A stretch of DNA of 17,958 nt from Octopus sinensis. Lineage: Eukaryota. The DNA lies in the NCBI RefSeq assembly GCF_006345805.1, contig NW_021824743.1, forward strand, positions 1-17,958, read 5' to 3'. A model generated the notes under the pieces. The model worked only from the letters and a program-made list of their open reading frames with translations, ran no database searches and was not told the origin of the DNA. Each line of letters opens with the position of its first letter. Position 1 is the stretch's first letter. Positions 886 to 17,459 of this stretch are shown piece after piece. Made by a program: the position numbers and the translations under genes.

Positions 886-2389
886 GGGTGCGGTGAATAA
901 ATTGTCCTCTAAATTACGCAAAAATGAAAATAACACTGACATTTCGTTTTAATAGAAATATTTACCAAAATTACATTGAAATATCTTCAAATATCAAAAA
1001 GTAAATTTATTCAATAAAATCACCATTGGCTTCAACCACGGTCTCCAGACGACTTTGAAATTTCCTGCAACTCTTCTGGACAGTCTCCTTGCTTAAGTTG
1101 GTGAATGCTGTCATAATCCTTGTCTTCAGTTGATCTTTGGTGTTACAAGCAGTTTTGTTGGTCTCTCGCTCAACTGCATTTCATACATAATAATCAAGGG
1201 GTTCGCAGCCTGGGGAGTTAGATGGCCAGGTTTTAGGGGTGGTGTGGTCACAGAAAATATCTGGCAGTCATAACTGTGTTCTGTTTTTTTTCGCATGGTG
1301 TAGAGTCCTGTTGCCAGATATAGGGTCTTCCGGCAGCCACCCTCTTGATCCAGGGCCGCACTACCTCTTCCAGGTACTTGGTATAGGCCTCCGCGTTGAG
1401 TCTGTGGCCGTGTGGGAAGATAAATGAATGCATAACGTCGCCATCACTAGCGATCATTCCAAACACCATGATATTGATGTTTGATTTTTATCACTCTAGA
1501 CACATGTTTTGGGTACACAACAAGTCAATGGTTGTTCTGTTTGTTCACCATGTGCTGAAAATATCTGGCAGTCATAACTGTGTTCTGTTTTTTTCGCATG
1601 GTGTAGAGTCCTGTTGCCAGACATAGGGTCTTCCAGCAGCCACCCTCTTGACCCAGGGCCGCTTGTAACACCAAAGATCAACTGAAGACAAGGATTATGA
1701 CAGCATTCACCAACTTAAGCAAGGAGACCGTTCAGAAGAGTTGCAGGAGATTCCGAAGTCGTCTGGAGACCGTGGTTGAAGCCAATGGTGATTTTATTGA
1801 ATAAATTTACTTTTTGATATTTGAAGATATTTTAATGTAATGTTCACCATGTGCTGAAACGTTTCTCGTTTGAAAAAACCCCAAAACCAGTGTATGTTCA
1901 GTTGGAGGGGATGCGTGAGTTTCTTCAAAAGATTCGTAGCGCGGTCTTTCCTGTCCTTGATGGCTTGGGATAAAAACTGACCGTCTGTCATCTTGTATGA
2001 GGAATACCGAATGTTTTCATGCAATACCTGCCTGATAAGTAAGACACTTCCATATCCCTGGGGATGGACCTGATTGATTTGGAGGGATCGTTTTCAATCA
2101 TGGCCTGGATCTTTTCTTATTGGATGTATTCTTATTACAATGATCAGAGTGAGTTTTCTGAGCTGCCGTACCTTCGTAATCACCTTTAGACTCATCCAAC
2201 TCTTTTCGAATCCCCTGTGCTCTCTTCAGATTAACATCCAAACACTCTGAAGTATTGGAACTTCCACCACCACCATCACCATTTCCAAATTTCTAGCTGA
2301 GTGAATTGCGTGTGCCCAACTGACCCTTCTATACTATGTAGTCAACAACATCAAAAAAAACCAAATGGTGACAATTTACCCATCGCACC
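886..2389 (-). mobile_element. Tc1/mariner superfamily DNA transposon, DD37D (maT) family, defective
   Basis: Imperfect TIRs (left GGGTGCGGTGAATAAATTGTC; right GACAATTTACCCATCGCACC) are flanked by TA on both sides. Minus-strand transposase fragments: HENIRYSSYKM..GQFLSQA..KDRA..LLKKL.HPLQ, MVFGMIASDGDVMHSFIFPHGHRLNAEAYTKYLEEVVRPWIKRVAAGRPYIWQQDS, and TWPSNSPGCEPLDYYV*NAVERETNKTACNTKDQLKTRIMTAFTNLSKETVQKSCRKFQSRLETVVEANGDFIE*. Confidence 0.9.
1014..2270 (-). pseudogene. DD37D transposase pseudogene
   Basis: Frameshift in an A-run after QQDSTPC, two Trp-to-TGA stops, a degenerate first-Asp (FSDE) region, and an interrupting insertion at 1561-1840. The 5' boundary is approximate. Confidence 0.85.
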
Positions 2390-2918: not shown

Positions 2919-3008
2919 TAATAATATAATATTATATATATATATATATTATATATATATATATATATTATATATATATGTATATATATATATATAGTAT
3001 ATATATAT
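2847..3008. repeat. (TA)n microsatellite
   Basis: Read directly. Confidence 0.95.
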
Positions 3009-3188
3009 GCGCAGGAGTGGCTGTATGGTAAGTAGCTTGCTAACCAACGACATGGTTCCGGTTCAGTCCCACTGCGTGGCATCTTGGGCAAGTATCTTCT
3101 GCTATAGCCCCGGGCCGACCAATGCCTTGTGACATGGATTTGGTAGACGGAAACTGAAAGAAGCCTGTCGTATATATGTATATATATA

Positions 3189-3226
<38 letters not shown>

Positions 3227-3449
3227 ATGTTGTGTGTCTGTGTTTGTCCCCCTAGCATTGCTTGACAACCGATGCTGTGTGTGTTTACGTCCCCGTTACT
3301 TAGCGGTTCGGCAAAAAGGGAGCGATAGAATAAGTACTGGGCTTACAAAGAATAAGTTCTGGGGTTGATTTGCTCGACTAAAGGCGGTGCTCCAGCATGA
3401 CCGCAGTCAAATGACTGAAACAAGTAAAAGAATAAAAGAATAAAAGAAT
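3009..3449 (+). mobile_element. tRNA-type SINE family A (internal TA/GT microsatellite, GAATAAAA tail), full length
   Basis: A-box-like TGGCTGTATGGT and B-box-like GGTTCAGTCC head. Near-identical to the copy at 14783-15256 and to several partial copies. Confidence 0.9.
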
Positions 3450-3470
3450 ATATATATATATATATATATG

Positions 3471-4098: not shown

Positions 4099-4500
4099 GG
4101 CATGGCTGTGTGGTTAACAAGTTCGCTTTGCAGCTATGTGGTTTTGAGTTCGGTTCACTGTGCGGCTCCTTGGGAGAGTGCTTTCTACTATAGCCCCTAG
4201 GCTGACCAACGCCTTGTGAATGAATTTGGTAGACGGAAAGGAAACAATGAAAGTCCTTTCTACTATAAGCTCAAGGCTTGAAATTTGGCGGGAGGAGGCC
4301 TGTCGATTATATCGCCCCCAGTGAGCAACTGGTACTTAATTTATCGACCCTGAAAGAATGAAAGGCAAAATCGACCTCAGCGGAATTTGAACCCAGAACG
4401 TAAAGACAGGCGAAATACCGCTAAGCATTTCGCCCGCCGTGCTAACGATCCTGCCAGTTCATAGCCTTGTAAACAATGAAAGTCCGCCGTACATTTATAT
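4099..4500 (+). mobile_element. SINE family A 5' half, degenerate, interrupted by a family-B SINE
   Basis: GGCATGGCTGTGTGGTT...GCCTTGTGAATGAATTTGGTAGACGGAAA matches the family A head. Confidence 0.7.
4257..4470 (-). mobile_element. SINE family B with 15-bp TSD
   Basis: AAACAATGAAAGTCC at 4242-4256 and 4471-4485. The body matches copies at 7949-8140 and 13870-14093. Confidence 0.85.
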
Positions 4501-5293: not shown

Positions 5294-5490
5294 AATCCAA
5301 ACATGAACAAAAAGAAAACACAACAACGCGAGAACGTTCAGCAAGTATAGTGTTATTGGACGCTCAGGAAAGGAAAGAAAGGAGGATTTAACGTTTCGAG
5401 CGGAGCTCTTCGTCAGTAGCATATAAAAAGGAAAGGTTCAAGGAAGGGAAGACGGAGAGAGAAAATCGCCAACGATACCCACGCGGTCAC
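5289..5490 (-). mobile_element. ~200 bp non-coding element carrying a hammerhead motif (PLE pLTR-derived or retrozyme-like)
   Basis: Lies between (TA)n and (CA)n tracts and contains the hammerhead core at 5387-5420. Confidence 0.6.
5387..5420 (-). ncRNA. Minimal type-I hammerhead ribozyme motif, helix I disrupted in this copy
   Basis: Reverse complement: gcta CTGACGA A GAGC-tcc-GCTC GAAA CG TT AAA. It has a perfect 4-bp helix II and a palindromic AACGTT helix III. Confidence 0.65.
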
Positions 5491-5503
5491 GCGCACGCAC
5501 ACA

Positions 5504-5571
<68 letters not shown>

Positions 5572-5629
5572 GGAGGACGGGGTGATTTTCCTTTGTACCT
5601 ATCAATTACTGCACTTGACAGCAGTTCCA

Positions 5630-5745: not shown

Positions 5746-6034
5746 AATGATGAAACAACAGGATAATTTGAACTGAGAATTAAATGGTACCTAAGGAAAG
5801 AAGCAAATATGAACAAAATTAAACAAACAGGCATGAGTTGCATGCCATTTGATCCTAAACGTGCTTCGTAATAGCTGACTTATGGTTAAGCAACATCAAC
5901 AACAACAACAAACACTATCGTGTTTTAATGCCCTTAATATAGTGTTATATACTGCGTATTAATATTTCCATACACAGTACAATAACTGCTCTTTACACCC
6001 AATTGTATCGCTTCTTTAAGATATACTAAGATTG

Positions 6035-6600
6035 CTCTGTACGCCATGCTATCATGGCTCTCTACACTATACTTTCATGGTTTTCTATGCTCTACTATGA
6101 TGGCTTTCTACTCTATATATATCTATGGCTTTCTACGTTAAATTATGATGGCTCCCTACACTGTACTATGATTCTTTTCTACGCCGTACTATATCGGCTT
6201 TCTACGCTTTACTATGATGGCTTTCTACGCTATACTATGATGGCTTTCTACACTATACTAGGCTTGCTCTCAACCCTATAATATTATGGCTTTCTACTGT
6301 ATAATATGATTGCTCTCTACGCTCTATTATTATGGTTTGCTACGCTATACTATGATGGTTCTATACTCTATATTATTATGTCTTTCTATGTTATTCTATG
6401 ATGGCTCTCTACGCTATATTAGTATGGTTTTCTACGTTATACTATGATAGCTCTCTACGCTATATTATTATATTTTTTCCCGCTATACTATGGTGGCTCT
6501 CAACGCTTCACTATGAAAACTTTCTACACTGTATTATGATGTTTCTGTACGCTATACTATGATATCTTCGCTGTACTATGATACGGCTTTGCGATATACT
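6035..6600. repeat. Degenerate 23-bp minisatellite, consensus ~CTATGATGGCTTTCTACGCTATA, roughly 24 units
   Basis: Adjacent near-exact units around 6212-6257, with periodic ATGATGGCTTTCTAC throughout. Confidence 0.85.
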
Positions 6601-6639
6601 AATCCCCTTGCGATAAACTTCTTCAATTTCCGCCCACCA

Positions 6640-6772
6640 ACTCCACTGACAAGAGTTTAGTATATCCAAGGCTATAGTAAAAGAGGTTTCCTCAAGGTGC
6701 CACGCAACAGAATTGAACTCAAGACCACATAATTACGAAGCAACCTTCTTACCACACAGCCATGCCTGCGCC
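6640..6772 (-). mobile_element. SINE family A head fragment
   Basis: CTTACCACACAGCCATGCCTGCGCC is the reverse complement of the family A 5' end. Confidence 0.7.
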
Positions 6773-8960: not shown

Positions 8961-9346
8961 ATTATTATCATTATTATTATTATTATTGATTGCCTTTACA
9001 CAGCTTCTAACGATGGAGATATACTACAGTGTCAGCTATTCACTACAGGTGAACTAAGGTAACACCTCTTACCTTTCGAACGCTTCCGGAGTATTCGAGC
9101 GGTTCCAAGCAGTGCTGTTTTCTGCAAATGCTCCACCCCTATTGCAGCCCCTATTTGTTCCACGTACTTCTCGAGATTTTTGATCACTGTTCCCAGGGAT
9201 CCAACAATTATTGGTACTATTGCTACCTTTTCCATCGACCACAACTGCTTAACTTCCCAAGCTAACCTGTCATGTCTCTCGACTTTTCTTTCTTCCTTAT
9301 CGCATAACTTGTTGTCAGCTGGGCATGCTATATCTATTATTATCAA
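8961..9346 (-). mobile_element. Second R4/Dong-like RLE LINE 3' fragment, different subfamily, within (AAT)n
   Basis: ORF 9032-9346: IIDIACPADNKLCDKEERKVERHDRLAWEVKQLWSMEKVAIVPIIVGSLGTV...LQKTALLGTARILRK, a restriction-like endonuclease C-terminus (D..E..K..Y/H..L; VP.IVG.LG). AAT repeats lie on both sides. Confidence 0.85.
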
Positions 9347-9358
9347 TATTATTATTAT

Positions 9359-9558
9359 TAAGACTATAAAGGACCGAGTAACTCATCCAGAAGTTATACA
9401 CAAATAAATAGAAGAGTGCCATATCATGTGAAATTGGTTGAACAATATTTCGGCATCTAGCGTGCTTTCCACTGGTTCCAAATTATATGTCAGTCTACTT
9501 CATGTTTTGTTAAGACTTTATAGGTCCGAGGTAACTCATCCAGAAGTTATACACAAAT
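9359..9558. repeat. ~48-bp imperfect direct repeat, 151 bp period
   Basis: TTAAGACT..A.AGG.CCGAG(G)TAACTCATCCAGAAGTTATACACAAAT at ~9359-9406 and ~9510-9558. Confidence 0.8.
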
Positions 9559-9561
9559 TAC

Positions 9562-9594
<33 letters not shown>

Positions 9595-9619
9595 TAAATG
9601 TTTCGACACACTTTCCAAC

Positions 9620-9748
9620 CCCGAATACACTCATAAGGTATAGTCTACCAGGTCCATAGTAGAAGACACCTTCCTAAGGTGCCGCGCAGTGGGACTGAAC
9701 TCAAAACCACCTGGCTGCGAAGCGAGCGTCTTAACTACCCAGCCATAT
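9620..9748 (-). mobile_element. SINE family A head fragment
   Basis: ATAGTAGAAGACACCTTCCTAAGGTGCCGCGCAGTGGGACTGAAC...CCCAGCCAT. Confidence 0.7.
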
Positions 9749-10036
9749 CTAAAAACTTAAATAATATTTTTTTTTAAATACATGATACCCACCTTATTTT
9801 TAGAAACACTGCTATAATATATATATTATTACTTGTTACTTATTATATATTGATTATTCATTTTTATACTTTTTGAGATCCAGTTATATGTTTTATAAAA
9901 ATATATATGATTTGTTATTTATGTTTTGGTTTATGTTTTTCACTGTTTGAGTTGCATAATAGTGGTTTTATCTCTAATTTATATCATATATATATATATA
10001 TATATATACTTTATTTTAAGCAGCAGAAAATTCAAC

Positions 10037-10084
10037 AAAATCTGTTACTCTGAGTTTCTCGTTGCCGTTCATCAGACAGTTTTT
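10037..10084 (-). ncRNA. Minimal type-I hammerhead ribozyme (left arm)
   Basis: Reverse complement: AAAA-A-CTGT CTGATGA A-CG-GCAA-CG-A GAAA CTCAGAG TA ACAG-A-TTTT, identical to the right-arm copy. Confidence 0.75.
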
Positions 10085-11109
10085 CTAGAATGGAAATTAT
10101 ATATTAATTCAATCTATACTCTTACAAACGCTACACCTTTAAAAAGAAATGGACTTGTTGATTGGCCCTTAGAAAAAACGGTCAATCTTCGAGCGATAAA
10201 CAAAAAGGTCAAAATATATGTATATATATATAAAAAACTTATAAAAATTATAAAAATTATAAAATCCGAGGAAAAAACCGAGGAAAAAACCTATTGCCGT
10301 TAATGAAGACAGTACAAATTAATGCACAGAAATTAAACCTGTTATTAAATACTGCAATACATATTTATATTAAAATCCACATATATATATCAACATACAC
10401 AAAGGATGCGCGTAAACGCCATACATACATATACAGACGTATGAATATGAATCTAAATTATACACATAAAGCATGTGTACATATATTCACGCAAACCGTC
10501 TCGCACGCAAGCTAAAATTCATCTATGTAGCATTCTCATATACTGAGCAAGGAGGGGGAACGAAAGAAGGGAAAGAGAGAAAAAGGAACGAAGGAGGGGT
10601 GGGAAAAAACTTGTAGCGAGTTATTGCATCTATAGAGGCCAGTATACATACACAAGTTTGATGATACAAATACATATCGTCGTGTGTATGCGTGCTTAAG
10701 CACAAGCATACTTTCACTTACACATACACAGATACGCATGCTTACAAATACATATGCTTTGCTATACACATACTTATATAAACATTCTAATTTTGACAAC
10801 ATTGCTTTTTTTAAAAAAAATTGCTTTTAAAAAATGGGTGCATTAATAAAAATATATACGAAAGACATATAAAATAAAATATAACATCCTATTTTGGGTC
10901 ATTTATAAATAATCAAGGTAGTATAAATAATCAAGGTAATCCTATGCAATACAATAACATGAAAAACAAGTTTGTAGGTTTTTCCTAATATATATGTAGA
11001 AAACAATAAGACTTTGCTATAGATCCGTCGTGGCGCTCAAGAGTCAAAATCAAAATCAAAAATCAAAATACAAAATATATACTCTATCCATATGGTATAT
11101 TTATATTCG

Positions 11110-11547
11110 ACATTTTAAATTTAGCCGCGTGCCTACATAAGTTCATAACTCACTTCTTTGATTCAAAGAATTATGTTCTTTGATAAGATATGCATTTTCT
11201 CTAATAAGCAAAGCCTGCACTTGAAATTATATTTGTAAGCCCATGCCTGTATGGTGCCGCCCTGTCCAGAATGCTCCATGGTCACGTTGAAAGGTGGGGC
11301 TTCCTTTTCTTTTGTTCCCAGACATATTTTGCTAGGCTGGTTTTCTTCCTATTCTCTGGGTATTTAAAAGAATTCTTATGAGAATAAAATCTTGTTTTAA
11401 ATGAATTTTCTGAAGCCCCTGTGTATGTCTTGTATTCGATGAGCCTTCCACTTGCACCTTGGCTCTATAAACTACTCCTTTCACTAGACATTTCCCTTTC
11501 TAACGGAAAGGAGCTTCGTTTTTGAACTTACATTTCTTAATTACATT
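11110..11547 (-). pseudogene. PLE GIY-YIG endonuclease C-terminal domain, frameshifted
   Basis: GKCLVKGVVYRAKV / EYKTYTGASENSFKTRFYSHKNSFKYPENRKKTSLAKYVWEQK / WSILDRAAPYRHG / KCRLCLLEKMHIL / LNQRSE(L)MNLCRHAAKFKMSNI. It shows a GVVY-YTG variant of GIY-YIG and the conserved Arg (KTRF), Glu (LLEK) and Asn (LNQRSE). Confidence 0.85.
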
Positions 11548-12647
11548 TCAAAGACAATAATTCTTTGAATCAAAGAAGTGAGTTAATGAACTTATGTAGG
11601 CACGCGGCTAAATTTAAAATGTCGAATATAAATAACCATATGGATAGAGTATATATTTTGTATTTTGATTTTTGATTTTTGATTTTGACTCTTGAGCACA
11701 CGACGGATCTATAGCAAAGTCTTATTGTTTCTACATATATATTAGGAAAACCTACAAACTTTGTTTTCATGTTATTGTATTGCATAGGATTACCTTGATT
11801 ATTTATACTACCTTGATTATTTATAAATGACCCAAAATAGGATGTTATATTTTATTTTATATGTCTTTCGTAATATTTTATTAATGCACCCATTTTTTAA
11901 AAAGCAATGTTTTTTTAAAAAAAGCAATGTTGTCAAAATTAGAATGTTTATAAAGTATGTGTATAGCAAAGCATATGTATTTGTAAGCATGCGTATCTGT
12001 GTATGTGTAAGTGAAAGTATGCTTGTGCTTAAGCACGCATACACACGACGATATGTATATGTATCAATTCAAACTTGTGTATGTATACTGGCCTCTATAG
12101 ATGCCAATAACATCGCTACAAGTTTTTTCCCCACCCCTCCTTCGTTCCTTTTTCTCTCTTTCCCTTTCTTTCGTTCCCCCTCCTTGCTCAGTATATGAGA
12201 ATTGCTACATAGATGAATTTTAGCTTGCGTGCGAGATGGTTGCGTGAATATATGTACACATGCTTTTATGTGTATAATTTAGATTCATATTCATACGTCT
12301 GTATATGTATGTATGGCGTTACGCGCATCCTTTTGTGTATGTGATATATATATGTGGATTTAATATAAATGTATTGCAGTATTTATAACAGGTTTAATTT
12401 CTGTGCATTAATTTGTACTGTCTTCATTACGGCAATAGGTTTTTTTCTCGGTTTTTTCCTCGGATTTTATAATTTTTATAATTTTTATAAGTTTTTTTAT
12501 ATATATATACATATATTTTTGACCTTTTTGTTTATCGCTCGAAGATTGACCGTTTTTTCTAAAGGGCCAATCAAACAAGTCCATTTTTTTAAAGGTGTAG
12601 CGTTTGTAAGAGTATAGATTGAATTAATATATAAGTTCCATTCTAGC

Positions 12648-12695
12648 AAAAACTGTCTGATGAACGGCAACGAGAAACTCAGAGTAACAGATTTT
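12648..12695 (+). ncRNA. Minimal type-I hammerhead ribozyme (right arm); predicted cleavage after GUA at 12686
   Basis: CUGAUGA 12657-12663 and GAAA 12674-12677. Helix I is CUGU/ACAG extended by AAAA/UUUU, helix II is CG/CG capped by a GCAA GNRA loop, and helix III is quasi-palindromic ACUC-A-GAGU. Confidence 0.75.
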
Positions 12696-12790
12696 GTTGA
12701 ATTTTCTGCTGCTTAAAAAAAGCATATACTCTCCACTGGTATTTGAGTACTCTTTTTTCCACCTTGTTTCACATTATGTGTTTACTCCGG

Positions 12791-12811
12791 CTATATATAT
12801 ATATATATATA

Positions 12812-12859
<48 letters not shown>

Positions 12860-13771: not shown

Positions 13772-14160
13772 ACATAGCTGAGTAGTAAGAAGCTGCCTTC
13801 TCAACTTCACCGTTTCGGGTTCAATCCCTCTACGAGACACCTTGAACAAATGACTTCTGCCATAAACTTATTTCTTTATTAACCGCAAGGAGCTAAACAT
13901 AGAGGGGACAAACAAGGACAGACAAAGGTATTAAGTCGATTACATCGACCCCAGTGCGTAACTGGTACTTAATTTATCGACCCCGAAAAGATGAAAGGCA
14001 AAGTCGACCTCGGCGGAATTTGAACTGACGTAACGGCAGACGAAAAACTGCTACATATTTCGCCCAGCGTGCTAACGTTTCTGCCAGCTCGCCATAAACT
14101 TGGTCTGACCAAAGCCTTGTCAGTGAATTTGGTAGAGAGATACTGAAAGAAGCCCATATA
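13772..14160 (+). mobile_element. Degenerate SINE family A 5' half, split by a family-B SINE
   Basis: Head at 13772-13869 resumes at 14094 with GGTCTGACCAAAGCCTTGTCAGTGAATTTGGTAGAGAGATACTGAAAGAAGCCC. Confidence 0.7.
13870..14093 (-). mobile_element. SINE family B with TSD
   Basis: (GCC)ATAAACTT at 13859-13869 and 14091-14101. Head reverse complement GGCGAGCTGGCAGAAACGTTAGCACGCTGGGCGAAAT. Confidence 0.85.
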
Positions 14161-14394
14161 TATTGGATTATATAAATCCATATACTGTACATTAAATTTA
14201 TACTCATATATTTAACAGAGGATTCTTTCAGTTTCCGTCTACTAAATATGTACCAGTTGAACACAGGGTTCGATGTAATCGACCTGTCCCTTCCGCTAAA
14301 ATTGCTAGCCTTGTGCCAAACTTTGAACCCATTCTTTTTGTCCTGTTTGCTGTTGTTAAACTTCTTTTTAAGCTTTTAAATCTTTTCATATAGA

Positions 14395-14678: not shown

Positions 14679-14782
14679 CTATAGCAACTAAGTTAGCACA
14701 GACATCGTGGGAAATAAAACTAATAGATATAACCTTGTTATTATCCTATGACAAAATCGTTATCATTCTATAATTATGTATA

Positions 14783-14951
14783 CAGAGGAGTGGCTGTGTG
14801 GTAAGTAGCTCGCTTACCAACCACATGGTTCCGGGCTCAGTCCCACTGCGTGGCACCTTCTGCAAGTGTCTTCTACTATAGTCTCTGGCCGACCAAAGCC
14901 TTGTGAGTGGATTTAGTAGACGGAGGTAAAAGAAGCCCGTCGTATATATAT

Positions 14952-15033
<82 letters not shown>

Positions 15034-15256
15034 CTCGGTGTGTCTGTGTTTGTCCCACACACCACTAGCAACATCGCTTGACGACTGATGCTGGTGTGTT
15101 TACGTCCCCGTAACTTAGCGGTTCGGCAAAAGAGACCGATAGAATAAGTACTAGGCTTACAAAGTATAAGTCGATTTCTTCGACTAAAGGCGGTGCTCCA
15201 GCATGGGCGCAATCAAATGACTGAAACAAGTAAAACAAAGAATAAAAGAATAAAGA
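14783..15256 (+). mobile_element. SINE family A, full length
   Basis: Matches 3009-3449 over head, internal microsatellite and GAATAAAAGAA tail. Confidence 0.9.
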
Positions 15257-15359
15257 AATTATAGACACAGGTATGGCGGTGAGATTAAGAAACTCTGTTT
15301 CCAAACACTTTAGATTTAATTATGCGGGTTTTTTTCCCTCCACTTCCCAATTACTAACG

Positions 15360-15838
15360 TCTGTTTCTTCTTTTGACAAATGTCAAAATGGGATTCCGAA
15401 GGTTGTCTGGAGTAATGTTACGCGATAAGGTTGGTAGCTCGGAATTCAGCAAGTCTTTCTAAGTTGAGCCCTATTTCTCCTCATTGAAAGGTCACAACTC
15501 TGTTACATTGTGGAAGGAATCTTCAAGCTGAGCCCGCTGACAAGAGACCTAGGGATAGACCAAAATGAGATGGTTCGATTATACCCAAAGTGGATCAATG
15601 AAATGAGCAAAAATTTAAGTCTCAGCGCAACCTACAAAAAGGTTAGCATAGCTTGGGCTCATCTTAGTTCCCATGGATACACTGGTAGCTGCTAGTAAAA
15701 TTTACCATTTCAGTTCGTCACGTTTGGGATCCAACCGGAAAGTGTAATGACTGCCATTTCTGATAAGACCCTGTGGTGGAAGTGTCTAGCTCCAAGACGG
15801 CCCCAAGCATTATAGACGGAGAAGATGGATGGACATTC
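15360..15838 (+). mobile_element. RTE-clade (Expander/Rex3-like) LINE 3' end, degenerate
   Basis: With frameshifts: VKMGFRRLSGVMLRDKVGSSE..VEP / LLIERSQL / KRPRDRPK.RWFDY / SRLGIQPESVMTAISDKTLWWKCLAPRRPQAL*, followed by a GAAGATGGATGGA tail. Confidence 0.75.
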
Positions 15839-16605
15839 ATGCTTCTGATATCAAGAGTAGAAAGCTTTTAAGCAAAGTTAGTGGAAGTGTCTAGCTCCAA
15901 GACGGCCCCAAGCATTATAGACGGAGAAGATGGATGGACATCATGCTTCTGATTCAAGAGTAGAAAGCTTTAAGCCAAGTTAGTGGAATGTCTAGCTCCA
16001 AGACGGCCCCAAGCATTATAGACGGAGAAGTGGATGGACATTCATGCTTTGATATCAAGAGAGAAGCTTTTAAGCAAAGTTAGTGGAAGTTGTCTAGCTC
16101 CAAGACGGCCCCAAGCATTATAGAGGAGAAGATGGATGGACATTCATGCTTCTGATATCAAGAGTAGAAAGCTTTTAAGCAAAGTTAGTGGAAGTGTCTA
16201 GCTCCAAGACGGCCCCAAGCATTAAGACGGAGAAGATGGATGGACATTCATGCTTCTGAATCGAGAATAGAAAGCTTTTAAGCAAAGTTAGTGGAAGTGT
16301 CTAGCTCCAAGACGGCCCCAAGCATTATAGACGGAGAAGATGGATGGACATTCATGCTTCTGATATCAAGAGTAGAAAGCTTTTAAGCAAAGTTAGTGGA
16401 AGTGTCTAGCTCCAAGACGGCCCCAAGCATTATAGACGGAGAAGATGGATGGACATTCATGCTTCTGATATCGAGAATAGAAAGCTTTTAAGCAAAGTTA
16501 GTGGAAGTGTCTAGCTCCAAGACGGCCCCAAGCATTATAGACGGAGAAGATGGATGGACATTCATGCTTCTGATATCAAGAGTAGAAAGCTTTTAAGCAA
16601 AGTTA
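15776..16605. repeat. Tandem array of 8 units of ~105 bp
   Basis: Units start at 15776, 15881, 15983, 16083, 16188, 16291, 16396 and 16501. Consensus GTGGAAGTGTCTAGCTCCAAGACGGCCCCAAGCATTATAGACGGAGAAGATGGATGGACATTCATGCTTCTGATATCAAGAGTAGAAAGCTTTTAAGCAAAGTTA. Confidence 0.95.
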
Positions 16606-16788: not shown

Positions 16789-16831
<43 letters not shown>

Positions 16832-17000
16832 ACGACAAATTTCTCTCAGTTTCCGTCTATCAAATCCTCCCACTCACAAGGCTTTGGTCAGCCCGATGCT
16901 ACAGTAGAAGACGCTAGGCCAAGGTATCACGCTGTGGGACTGAACCCGGAACACTGTGGCTGGGAAGTAAGCTTCTTACCACACAGCCATGCCTGCGCCT
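16650..17000 (-). mobile_element. SINE family A, near full length, degenerate
   Basis: CTTACCACACAGCCATGCCTGCGCCT head end, CAGTTTCCGTCTATCAAAT and an internal (CA)n. Confidence 0.85.
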
Positions 17001-17459
17001 ATGAATGCATTATGGCCTTAAATTACAATATCTTATCTAAGTTTTCGAACTAAAGTGCTATGATAATAATGTTAGTGTTTATACGTTTTTATAGATAGCA
17101 ATTATTTATCGTTAAACTGACATTTCTCCGCAATACGTTGTATACATTATCTTTCTCTGTTAATCGAAATTACGGTATATCCTCCACGTATGAAACATGC
17201 AAATGATGCTCATTAGCGAAATGTTTAGAGTAAATGTTATTCTACGTGACATGCATTAGCTATAAATACTTGTATCTCTGTCGATTCGTTCACTTTTATT
17301 TGTGTGTTTTCATGAAATTGTGCAGAAGATAAAATACACTGTTTGAATGCCCGCTTGACTTCTGTGGTATTCCGGTCGATGTTTACAGTCGGTGTTAATC
17401 GACCGTTGGAAACAACACGTGATTGCATCTCTTATTTATTTATTAATTGATTTATCTTT

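What the first reader, a model, noticed from the sequence alone, without database searches (positions are those of the whole stretch)
10004..12790. Penelope-like element captured as a 2.8 kb inverted (head-to-head) pLTR structure around a GIY-YIG core
Seen: two ~1.18 kb arms in inverted orientation around a 364 bp spacer. On the minus strand the spacer reads as a GIY-YIG endonuclease whose C-terminus (LNQRSE..CRH) runs into the left arm and is repeated in the right arm. The right arm continues ~60 nt beyond the shared region (12728-12790), and both ends stop at (TA)n. Known: PLEs commonly insert as 5'-truncated copies with an inverted pLTR, and one terminus often has a short extension. Inference: this is a recent single insertion of a cephalopod PLE family with a long (~1 kb) 3' UTR/pLTR, targeting TA microsatellites. 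The ORF track misses it because of frameshifts.
Basis: partly seen in the sequence, partly recalled or inferred. Interest (0 to 1): 0.8.

Follow-up and report, generated by a model that had tools for sequence, protein, structure and literature searches.

The report
Head-to-head truncated Penelope-like retrotransposon insertion
This is an ordinary insertion of a Penelope-like retrotransposon (Hydra clade): two 5'-truncated copies joined head to head inside a TA repeat, a layout typical of these elements, so it is real but not new biology.

Summary
Arms 10003-11183 and 11548-12728 are inverted copies around a 364-bp spacer. The right arm carries a 62-nt extension, and (TA)n lies at both outer ends.

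On the minus strand, the spacer plus the inner left arm encode the C-terminal endonuclease of a Penelope-like element (PLE). Pfam and Rfam see nothing. However, the translation matches a large family (closest relative P0197, 51% identity). Its full-length members are ~700-aa proteins with the endonuclease at the C-terminus. They carry the features Craig et al. 2021 list for the Hydra clade: RWK, DKT, a CxCxnC linker, no CCHH, CxxC and CxH around E and N, and (TA)n targeting. So the clade is Hydra, not Naiad, and no selenocysteine is needed.

Each arm has a hammerhead-ribozyme motif, 37 and 104 nt from its end. The extension is conserved element sequence (the PLE "tail"), not host DNA. Five relatives from short-read metagenomes show the same head-to-head layout, which argues against a foldback artefact.

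The arms differ by 33 small indels but only 10 substitutions. The reading frame has 7 frameshifts and no stop codon. The frameshifts are therefore probably assembly errors. The host cannot be identified. Verdict: a new member of a known kind, of low interest.

The parts
9986..10008 (.). Left remnant of the (TA)n target microsatellite
   Evidence: Read directly from the sequence. It abuts the 3' end of the minus-strand copy.
10009..11547 (-). Copy A: the longer 5'-truncated PLE copy (about the last 140 codons of the ORF plus a ~1.1 kb 3' UTR). Its 3' end is at ~10009 and its 5' truncation point at 11547.
   Evidence: The ORF runs without a break from the spacer into the left arm. tblastn with full-length relatives finds only residues from about 561-575 onward and no RT anywhere in the window.
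11093..11515 (-). Endonuclease (GIY-YIG type) coding remnant of copy A. It has 7 frameshifts and no in-frame stop under a frameshift-aware reading. The motifs VVY, YTG, R, H, CxxC-E and N..CxH are all kept.
   Evidence: Frameshift-aware alignment to P0197. BLASTP gives 51% identity, E 1e-40. All invariant columns of family alignment A1 are retained.
11184..11547 (-). The 'spacer': the 364 bp of copy A that lie 5' of the truncation point of copy B.
11548..12728 (+). Copy B: the shorter 5'-truncated copy, joined head to head to copy A at 11547|11548. Positions 11548-11640 read SKDNNSLNQRSELMNLCRHAAKF in one frame.
   Evidence: There is no TA repeat between the two 5' ends.
10038..10083 (-). Hammerhead-ribozyme motif of copy A. 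The predicted cleavage site is after 10046, 37 nt from the (TA)n.
   Evidence: A covariance model built from the hammerheads of 20 relatives gives 19.7 bits, E about 6e-4. This and its mirror are the only significant hits in the window.
12649..12694 (+). Hammerhead-ribozyme motif of copy B: CUGAUGA, helix II A-CG-GCAA-CG-A, GAAAC-UCAGA-GUA, cleavage after 12686. It lies 104 nt from the (TA)n.
   Evidence: The same variant is present in the closest relative, L075 468-513.
12729..12790 (+). The 'tail': element-derived extension present only on copy B. It holds the conserved motif UACUC..GAGUA at 12727-12749 and ends at a TATAT boundary.
   Evidence: It aligns to L075 530-600, between that element's hammerhead and its 5' UTR. 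The same tail is present or absent in sister insertions L015 and L014. The GCTC..GAGC / ACTC..GAGT motif occurs in 18 of 42 hammerhead-downstream stretches against 3.8% background.
12792..12859 (.). Right remnant of the (TA)n target microsatellite
   Evidence: Tandem Repeats Finder, period 2, 35.5 copies.

Best explanation
A single retrotransposition event of a Hydra-clade Penelope-like element into a (TA)n microsatellite left two 5'-truncated copies joined head to head.

The likely mechanism has four steps.
1. The element's GIY-YIG endonuclease cut both strands of the TA repeat.
2. Each 3' end primed reverse transcription of element RNA from near its 3' end. One start was at the outermost site, giving copy B, which keeps the 62-nt tail. 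The other was at an internal site about 65 nt upstream, giving copy A, which has no tail.
3. Synthesis stopped after ~1.54 kb on one side and ~1.24 kb on the other.
4. The two incomplete cDNAs were joined at 11547|11548.

What remains is non-autonomous. It has the last ~20% of the ORF (the endonuclease domain only), a ~1.1 kb 3' UTR, and a hammerhead-ribozyme motif 37 or 104 nt from each outer end.

Shown here: the anatomy, the family assignment, the hammerhead motif, that the tail is element sequence, and that the architecture recurs in relatives.

Inferred: priming on both strands in one event, the role of the two RT start sites, and that most frameshifts are assembly errors.
For: Anatomy.

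Family:
- The endonuclease translation hits P0001 (E 4e-21) and P0197 (51% identity, E 1e-40).
- The profile search finds 16,420 relatives. The long ones (~690-727 aa) match at their C-terminus.
- Alignment A4 of 12 full-length relatives shows RWR/RWK, invariant DKT, YRDD, a CNCx4-6CPL..G.C linker, CxxC before E and CxH after N. These are the features listed for Hydra in PMC8557442 section 11.

Fold:
- An AlphaFold2 model (pLDDT 84) has a beta-beta-alpha-alpha-beta-alpha order.
- Its best PDB hit is T4 EndoII, and Hpy188I also appears.
- Viral hits are dominated by GIY-YIG homing endonucleases and Endonuclease II, with probabilities up to 0.97.

Hammerhead: the relatives' motifs covary, and the model built from them hits only the two arms, on their sense strands.

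Tail: it is homologous to L075. Relatives show two classes of 3' end, with (TA)n starting 31-45 nt or 84-115 nt after the cleavage site. (TA)4+ follows 22 of 40 hammerheads against 6% background. L014 and L015 differ by exactly this tail.

Recurrence: the same head-to-head layout, with part of the endonuclease in the spacer, occurs in L046 (TA repeats on both flanks), L048, L044, L065 and L039.

Mechanism: a purified Poseidon PLE cleaves and extends both DNA strands and starts reverse transcription at two internal sites that bracket the tail (PMC11167929).
Against: - The RT is missing from this copy, so clade-defining RT motifs could only be checked in relatives. No reference Hydra sequences were available for a phylogeny.
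- Pfam detects neither GIY-YIG nor RVT_1 in any family member. The fold matches are individually weak (E 0.01-0.3).
- The hammerhead has only a 2-bp helix II with an A.A pair at positions 10.1/11.1. Rfam does not score it, and its activity is untested.
- The tail is 62 nt, against the 30-40 nt reported for other PLEs.
- Single-event formation cannot be proved from one locus. The in vitro data come from a different clade, and there initiation was reported as not homologous to the target.
Confidence: 0.85

Rival explanations
1. Two independent insertions of the same PLE family into the same TA microsatellite, in opposite orientations, that happen to abut at their 5' ends.
For: The family targets (TA)n, so repeated hits on one microsatellite are plausible. 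Tail-to-tail neighbours from separate insertions are seen in relatives (L002; L016).
Against: No TA units remain between the two 5' ends, although every insertion is expected to be flanked by the repeat. The arms differ by only 0.9% in substitutions. The same abutting head-to-head layout recurs in at least 5 unrelated loci.
Confidence: 0.08
2. Assembly artefact: a foldback or chimeric long read, or a mis-join, duplicated one arm in inverted orientation.
For: The arms differ mostly by 1-nt indels (33 against 10 substitutions). That is the signature of noisy long-read consensus, so the assembly is probably long-read based.
Against: - A foldback gives a palindrome with no spacer that runs to the end of the read. 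Here there is a 364-bp unique spacer and unique flanks on both sides.
- Each arm has its own mark of authenticity. The left arm continues the spacer's reading frame. The right arm carries a 62-nt tail, absent on the left, that is homologous to a relative's element.
- The same layout occurs in short-read metagenome assemblies.
Confidence: 0.03
3. An old insertion, or a later inverted duplication, whose arms stay alike through gene conversion. On this reading the frameshifted ORF reflects real decay.
For: Palindrome arms can be homogenised by conversion. The ORF as assembled is broken 7 times.
Against: The unconverted spacer shows no excess damage. Its frameshift density (5 in 364 nt) equals the per-copy indel disagreement of the arms (1.4%). 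It has no stop codons, and every invariant family residue is kept. Two frameshifts of the left arm are absent from the right arm. An indel-to-substitution ratio of 3:1 is not what neutral decay gives.
Confidence: 0.04

Closest known systems
Hydra clade of Penelope-like elements (Craig, Yushenova, Rodriguez and Arkhipova 2021, PMC8557442)
   Same: - C-terminal GIY-YIG endonuclease without the CCHH motif
- CxxC and CxH on either side of the catalytic E and N
- CxCxnC linker, RWK and DKT motifs, seen here in relatives
- insertion into (TA)n
- a hammerhead motif near the 3' end
- head-to-head and tandem pseudo-LTR structures and a one-sided tail
   Different: - The 3' UTR is ~1.1 kb, and ~0.9 kb in the closest relative L075. 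Most relatives have ~0.1-0.2 kb, and the clade is described as 'generally <3 kb'.
- Helix II of the hammerhead is reduced to 2 bp with a non-standard closing pair.
- The tail is ~62 nt rather than 30-40 nt.
- This copy lacks the RT, and one linker cysteine is replaced (FPLEGKCL).
Penelope/Poseidon PLEs (for example PAc of Anolis, PMC11167929)
   Same: Pseudo-LTR and inverted structures, an optional tail bounded by two RT start sites, cleavage and extension of both target strands, and a hammerhead in the repeat.
   Different: Those endonucleases have the CCHH motif and no upstream linker. They do not target TA microsatellites. The protein sequences are too distant for Pfam-level recognition.
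Naiad / Chlamys PLEs (N-terminal endonuclease)
   Same: A GIY-YIG endonuclease with a nearby CxC-type motif, microsatellite insertion bias, and tandem or inverted structures with tails.
   Different: In Naiads the endonuclease is N-terminal, followed by the RT, and canonical hammerheads are absent. Here the endonuclease ends the ORF and is followed by a UTR with a hammerhead motif. There is no evidence of in-frame UGA.
LINE-1 twin-priming inversions
   Same: A 5'-truncated retrotransposon copy with an internal inversion, created by priming on both target strands in one event.
   Different: Twin priming yields two different, adjacent segments of the element. Here both arms are the same 3' terminal segment, that is, two cDNAs both started at the 3' end.

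Membership tests
Penelope-like elements, Hydra clade | GIY-YIG endonuclease at the C-terminus of the single ORF, after the RT | tested here: met
   In the window the domain is followed by the end of the ORF and a non-coding 1.1 kb; no RT lies downstream or anywhere else. In relatives of 690-727 aa the match is at the C-terminal end. The RT itself is absent from this truncated copy.
Penelope-like elements, Hydra clade | CCHH motif of other PLE endonucleases is absent | tested here: met
   There is no cysteine between GKCL and CRLC in the window's translation, and none is conserved there in A1 or A4.
Penelope-like elements, Hydra clade | [quoted passage not shown] | tested here: met
   The window reads CRLCLLEK and LNQRSELMNLCRH. 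These columns are invariant in A1 and A4.
Penelope-like elements, Hydra clade | Linker with a CxCx5C motif upstream of the endonuclease | tested here: inconclusive
   Relatives have CNCx4-6CPL..G.C. The window copy is truncated at about this point and reads ..FPLEGKCL, so the CxC part is missing or unreadable and one Cys is replaced by Phe.
Penelope-like elements, Hydra clade | RT with an RWK motif and DKG changed to DKT | not testable with these tools
   The RT is absent from this copy. It is met in the closest full-length relative P0197 and in 12 of 12 sequences of A4 (D97 K98 T99 invariant; R19 W20). Other copies from the source genome could not be fetched.
Penelope-like elements, Hydra clade | Insertion into (TA)n | tested here: met
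   (TA)n lies at both outer ends of the window's structure. In relatives, (TA)4+ follows 22 of 40 hammerheads against 6% background.
Penelope-like elements, Hydra clade | Grouping with the reference Hydra families in an RT or endonuclease phylogeny | not tested
   No Repbase or supplementary reference sequences were available. The assignment rests on the diagnostic motifs described in the paper's text.
Penelope-like elements (general) | Pseudo-LTR or inverted 5'-truncated partner and a one-sided tail | tested here: met
   The description is in PMC8557442 section 6.
GIY-YIG nuclease superfamily | GIY..YIG strands, then a helix with R (and H/Y), a later E and N, in a beta-beta-alpha-alpha-beta-alpha fold | tested here: inconclusive
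   The motifs VVY, YTG, R, H, E and N are invariant. The AlphaFold2 topology fits. The top PDB hit is T4 EndoII at E 0.14, probability 0.72. Many GIY-YIG proteins lead the viral hits, with probabilities 0.84-0.97. Against this, Pfam PF01541 gives no hit, the PDB sequence profile search finds none, and no Foldseek E-value is below 0.009.
Type I hammerhead ribozyme (PLE type) | CUGANGA and GAAA cores, UH cleavage site, helices I-III with a short helix III and a small loop | tested here: met
   The cores and helices I and III are present. The covariance model from relatives gives 19.7 bits on both arms only. Helix I shows compensatory differences from L075.
Type I hammerhead ribozyme (PLE type) | Stable helix II closed by a standard 10.1-11.1 pair; self-cleavage activity | tested here: not met
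   Helix II is 2 bp plus a GCAA loop with A.A at 10.1/11.1. L075 has U.U with the same 2-bp stem. Cleavage activity cannot be tested with these tools.
Naiad PLEs | N-terminal endonuclease followed by a CxC linker and the RT; sometimes in-frame UGA (Sec) | tested here: not met
   The endonuclease is C-terminal in all full-length relatives. No RT lies downstream in the window. No in-frame stop remains in the frameshift-aware reading.

The most novel reading that the evidence does not exclude
The window copy and L075 may represent a distinct Hydra sub-lineage. Its features would be a ~1 kb 3' UTR, a hammerhead with a minimal 2-bp helix II, and a conserved ~65-nt tail module (GCUC..GAGC / ACUC..GAGU motif).

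Both borders of that tail are short UAUA runs. These could pair with the nicked (TA)n target. On this reading the two alternative reverse-transcription start sites, and the TA targeting itself, come from microhomology between target and template. That would be a concrete mechanism for the PLE 'tail'. It differs from the non-homologous internal initiation reported for Poseidon.
Probability: 0.25. Interest if true: 0.4.

Novelty: new member of a known kind. Interest (0 to 1): 0.2.

Why it matters
Little for biology at large. It is one more truncated copy of a retrotransposon clade described in 2021.

Its practical value is for annotation:
- Hydra-clade PLEs are invisible to Pfam (no RVT_1 or GIY-YIG hit).
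- Their hammerheads are invisible to Rfam.
- Their inverted structures look like assembly artefacts.

So such loci are easily left unannotated or mistrusted.

The locus also gives a clean single-locus picture of the two alternative 3' ends (with and without the tail), which recent biochemistry links to two RT start sites. Finally, it flags that this assembly probably carries ~1.4% indel errors in multi-copy repeats.

Tried and rejected
Searches that found nothing useful:
- Pfam on the window translation, on short and long relatives, and on the RT parts gave no GIY-YIG, RVT_1 or other meaningful hit.
- Rfam at E up to 10 on the window, on the arm end alone and on three relatives found no hammerhead, even where a canonical one is obvious. 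The Rfam negative is therefore uninformative, and I built my own model.
- A profile search against PDB sequences gave only chance-level hits such as VbhT.
- A second word-indexed protein search with the frameshift-corrected translation found no closer relative.
- The 3' UTR shows no nucleotide similarity to any fetched locus, apart from the hammerhead-tail block of L075.
- The tail has no copy elsewhere in the window.

Readings I rejected:
- Minimum-free-energy folding does not recover the proposed tail hairpin in the window or in L075 (z about 0). I report it as a conserved sequence motif only.
- The idea that the ~170-aa hits are a stand-alone small GIY-YIG protein. They are ORF calls starting at an internal Met of truncated copies; longer hits extend upstream into the RT.
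- The two apparent in-frame stops of my first manual reading. They vanish in the frameshift-aware alignment.
- A uniform assembly error rate. Another repeat pair in the window (967-1150 / 1661-1844) has 7 mismatches and no gaps, so indel excess is confined to multi-copy or AT-rich repeats.
Full report
1. OBSERVATION

The inverted repeat is real. A gapped alignment places the left arm at 10003-11183 and the right arm at 11548-12728 (reverse complement). It has 1153 matches, 10 mismatches and 33 gaps of 1-2 nt (ungapped blocks). The spacer is 11184-11547, 364 bp. Neither the arms nor the spacer recur elsewhere in the window.

(TA)n lies immediately outside both ends: 9986-10008, and 12792-12859 by Tandem Repeats Finder. 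The right arm is followed by 62 nt (12729-12790) that have no counterpart on the left.

2. THE CODING REMNANT

The minus strand of the spacer, continuing into the left arm, reads as a nuclease-like domain: GKCL..VVYRAKV..YTG..FKTR..H..CRLCLLEK..LNQRSEL..CRH.

Pfam finds nothing. The word-indexed protein search does find P0001 (39% identity, E 4e-21). P0001 in turn finds 209 relatives. Most are ~167-170 aa, but these are ORF calls that begin at an internal Met. Longer hits (~295 aa) and the contigs L001-L003 extend upstream into a polymerase-like ORF.

A profile search of 1.84 billion representatives finds 16,420 relatives. The long ones are 690-727 aa, and the match sits at their C-terminal end.

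Twelve of these long proteins align (A4). They share:
- RWR/RWK near the N-terminus;
- an invariant DKT;
- KDHK..RLINP, F.FD..FYPSI and GLYRDDGL;
- a linker CNCx4-6CPL..G.C;
- the nuclease, with CxxC just before the conserved E and CxH just after the conserved N, and no other conserved cysteines.

Craig et al. 2021 list exactly this combination for the Hydra clade of Penelope-like elements: a C-terminal endonuclease, RWK, DKG changed to DKT, no CCHH, a CxCx5C linker, CxxC and CxH around E and N, canonical hammerheads, and "almost all families" inserted in (TA)n (PMC8557442 section 11).

The closest relative of the window copy is P0197 (713 aa; 51% identity over the nuclease, E 1e-40). tblastn with full-length relatives finds only residues from about 561-575 onward in the window, and no RT anywhere. 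Copy A therefore keeps about the last fifth of the ORF. The Naiad suggestion (N-terminal nuclease) is not met.

3. IS IT GIY-YIG?

Sequence profiles (Pfam, and a PDB sequence search) do not say so. An AlphaFold2 model of the domain (pLDDT 84) has a beta-beta-alpha-alpha-beta-alpha order, with the VVY and YTG motifs on the first two strands. Its best PDB match is T4 endonuclease II, and Hpy188I is also listed. The best viral matches are mostly GIY-YIG homing endonucleases and Endonuclease II, with probabilities up to 0.97.

Each match is weak (E 0.01-0.3). I rate this feature as consistent but not proven by my own tests. The literature treats this domain as GIY-YIG.

4. FRAMESHIFTS

A frameshift-aware alignment to P0197 reads through about 140 codons with 7 frameshifts and no stop codon. 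The two "stops" of a naive reading are out of frame.

That density (1.7%) equals the per-copy indel disagreement of the arms: 33 / (2 x 1170) = 1.4%. Two of the left-arm frameshifts (at 11173 and 11144) are absent from the right arm, which reads SKDNNSLNQRSELMNLCRHAAKF in one frame. Indels outnumber substitutions 3:1, and 17 of 33 lie in homopolymer runs of 3 or more. The 105-bp satellite at 15776-16605 shows the same excess. A repeat pair at 967-1844 does not.

I infer that most frameshifts are consensus errors of a long-read assembly in multi-copy sequence. This is an inference, not a demonstration.

5. HAMMERHEAD

Rfam reports no hammerhead in the window. It also reports none in relatives where one is obvious by eye.

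A pattern scan found type I hammerheads 60-110 nt after the stop codon in most relatives. Twenty of them align, with 92% of cells paired and compensatory changes in 9 of 11 pairs. The covariance model built from them gives exactly two significant hits in the window: 12649-12694 (+) and 10083-10038 (-), each 19.7 bits. Each hit is on the sense strand of its copy.

The cores CUGAUGA and GAAA, helix I, and a 2-3 bp helix III with a small loop are present. Helix II is only CG-GCAA-CG, flanked by A.A. L075, which encodes P0197, has the same reduced helix II (U-CG-AUGA-CG-U) and compensatory differences in helix I. This therefore looks like a lineage variant rather than damage. Activity is untested.

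6. THE TAIL

The 62-nt extension is element sequence. Window 12654-12760 aligns to L075 473-580. The alignment runs from the hammerhead to a shared CTATAT at the outer border.

L075 is a tandem (pseudo-LTR) arrangement with a unit of ~3.19 kb. In it this segment lies between the hammerhead and the next ORF. This also shows a ~0.9 kb 3' UTR in that relative, comparable to the 1.1 kb here.

Among relatives, (TA)n begins either 31-45 nt or 84-115 nt after the hammerhead cleavage site. L014 and L015, two insertions of one family, differ by exactly such a tail. In the window the two distances are 37 nt (left) and 104 nt (right).

The tails share a motif, GCTC..(T)GAGCAC, which is ACTC..GAGTAC in the window and in L075. 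It occurs in 18 of 42 hammerhead-downstream stretches against 3.8% background. Energy folding does not support a hairpin there.

Both tail borders are short TA runs, so the ends cannot be set to the base, and pairing with the TA target is possible.

7. THE HEAD-TO-HEAD LAYOUT

The 5' ends meet at 11547|11548 with no TA units between them.

The same layout recurs in L046, L048, L044, L065 and L039: an inverted shorter copy abutting a longer copy, with part of the nuclease gene in the spacer. L046 has (TA)n on both outer flanks. These loci come from short-read metagenome assemblies, so long-read foldback artefacts cannot explain them.

In the window each arm has its own proof of authenticity. 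The left arm continues the spacer's reading frame. The right arm carries the tail.

The literature describes exactly this. [quoted passage not shown] Dual hammerheads on opposite strands are reported (PMC4209133). A purified Poseidon PLE cleaves and extends both target strands and starts reverse transcription at two internal sites that bracket the tail (PMC11167929).

8. VERDICT

The element is a Hydra-clade PLE, not a Naiad. There is no sign of selenocysteine. The broken frame is probably an assembly problem. The host could not be identified: the closest relatives come from unnamed ENA and JGI metagenome contigs.

It is a new member of a known kind. The long 3' UTR, the reduced helix II and the ~62-nt conserved tail are modest variations, shared with at least one relative.

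No full-length element sequence was built or printed, and no step had to be referred.

Noticed in passing
window 15776-16605: A satellite of 8 tandem copies of a 105-bp unit (95% matches, 3% indels). Copies differ mostly by indels (for example 21 gap positions against 3 mismatches), the same error-like pattern as the PLE arms.
   Followed up: partly
window 967-1150 / 1661-1844 (inverted) and 1253-1359 / 1557-1662 (direct): A second repeat structure of ~0.9 kb, 96% identical, with 7 mismatches and no gaps in the inverted pair. Its nature is unknown. It shows that the indel excess is not uniform across the window.
   Followed up: no
window 3002-3454, 14775-15263, 4099-4239, 6611-6772, 9549-9746, 14107-14214, 16824-17002 and others: A dispersed ~140-500 bp repeat (69-83% identity, at least 8 copies on both strands), usually next to TA or CA microsatellites. 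It is SINE-like. The weak Rfam SCARNA7 and sno_ZL1 hits at 14915-15106 and 5374-5629 fall in or near it.
   Followed up: no
window 6022-6563: A tandem array of a 23-bp unit (higher-order 92 bp), about 23 copies, 69-74% matches.
   Followed up: no
window 9032-9346 (-): A 104-aa ORF (..VPIIVGSLGTVIKNLEKYVEQIG..LQKTALLGTARILRK..). From memory it resembles the C-terminal tail of some invertebrate LINE ORF2 proteins. Pfam gives no hit, so this is unverified.
   Followed up: partly
loci L001-L075 (relatives): Rfam 15 hammerhead models miss PLE-type hammerheads altogether, including well-formed ones (for example L002 2232-2266). Pfam misses both the RT and the nuclease of this 16,000-member family. 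Only a weak HTH_animal (PF26215) mark appears.
   Followed up: yes
L014 1056-1130 vs L015 1372-1510; L011, L012, L016, L048, L055, L062: Hydra-clade insertions end at one of two positions, about 40 or about 100 nt after the hammerhead site. The ~60-nt piece between them carries a conserved GCTC..TGAGCAC motif across families that share only 33-50% nuclease identity.
   Followed up: partly
L075 1-95 vs 3186-3282: The contig that encodes the closest full-length relative (P0197) is a tandem, pseudo-LTR arrangement with a ~3.19 kb unit. The two repeat copies are 92% identical.
   Followed up: partly
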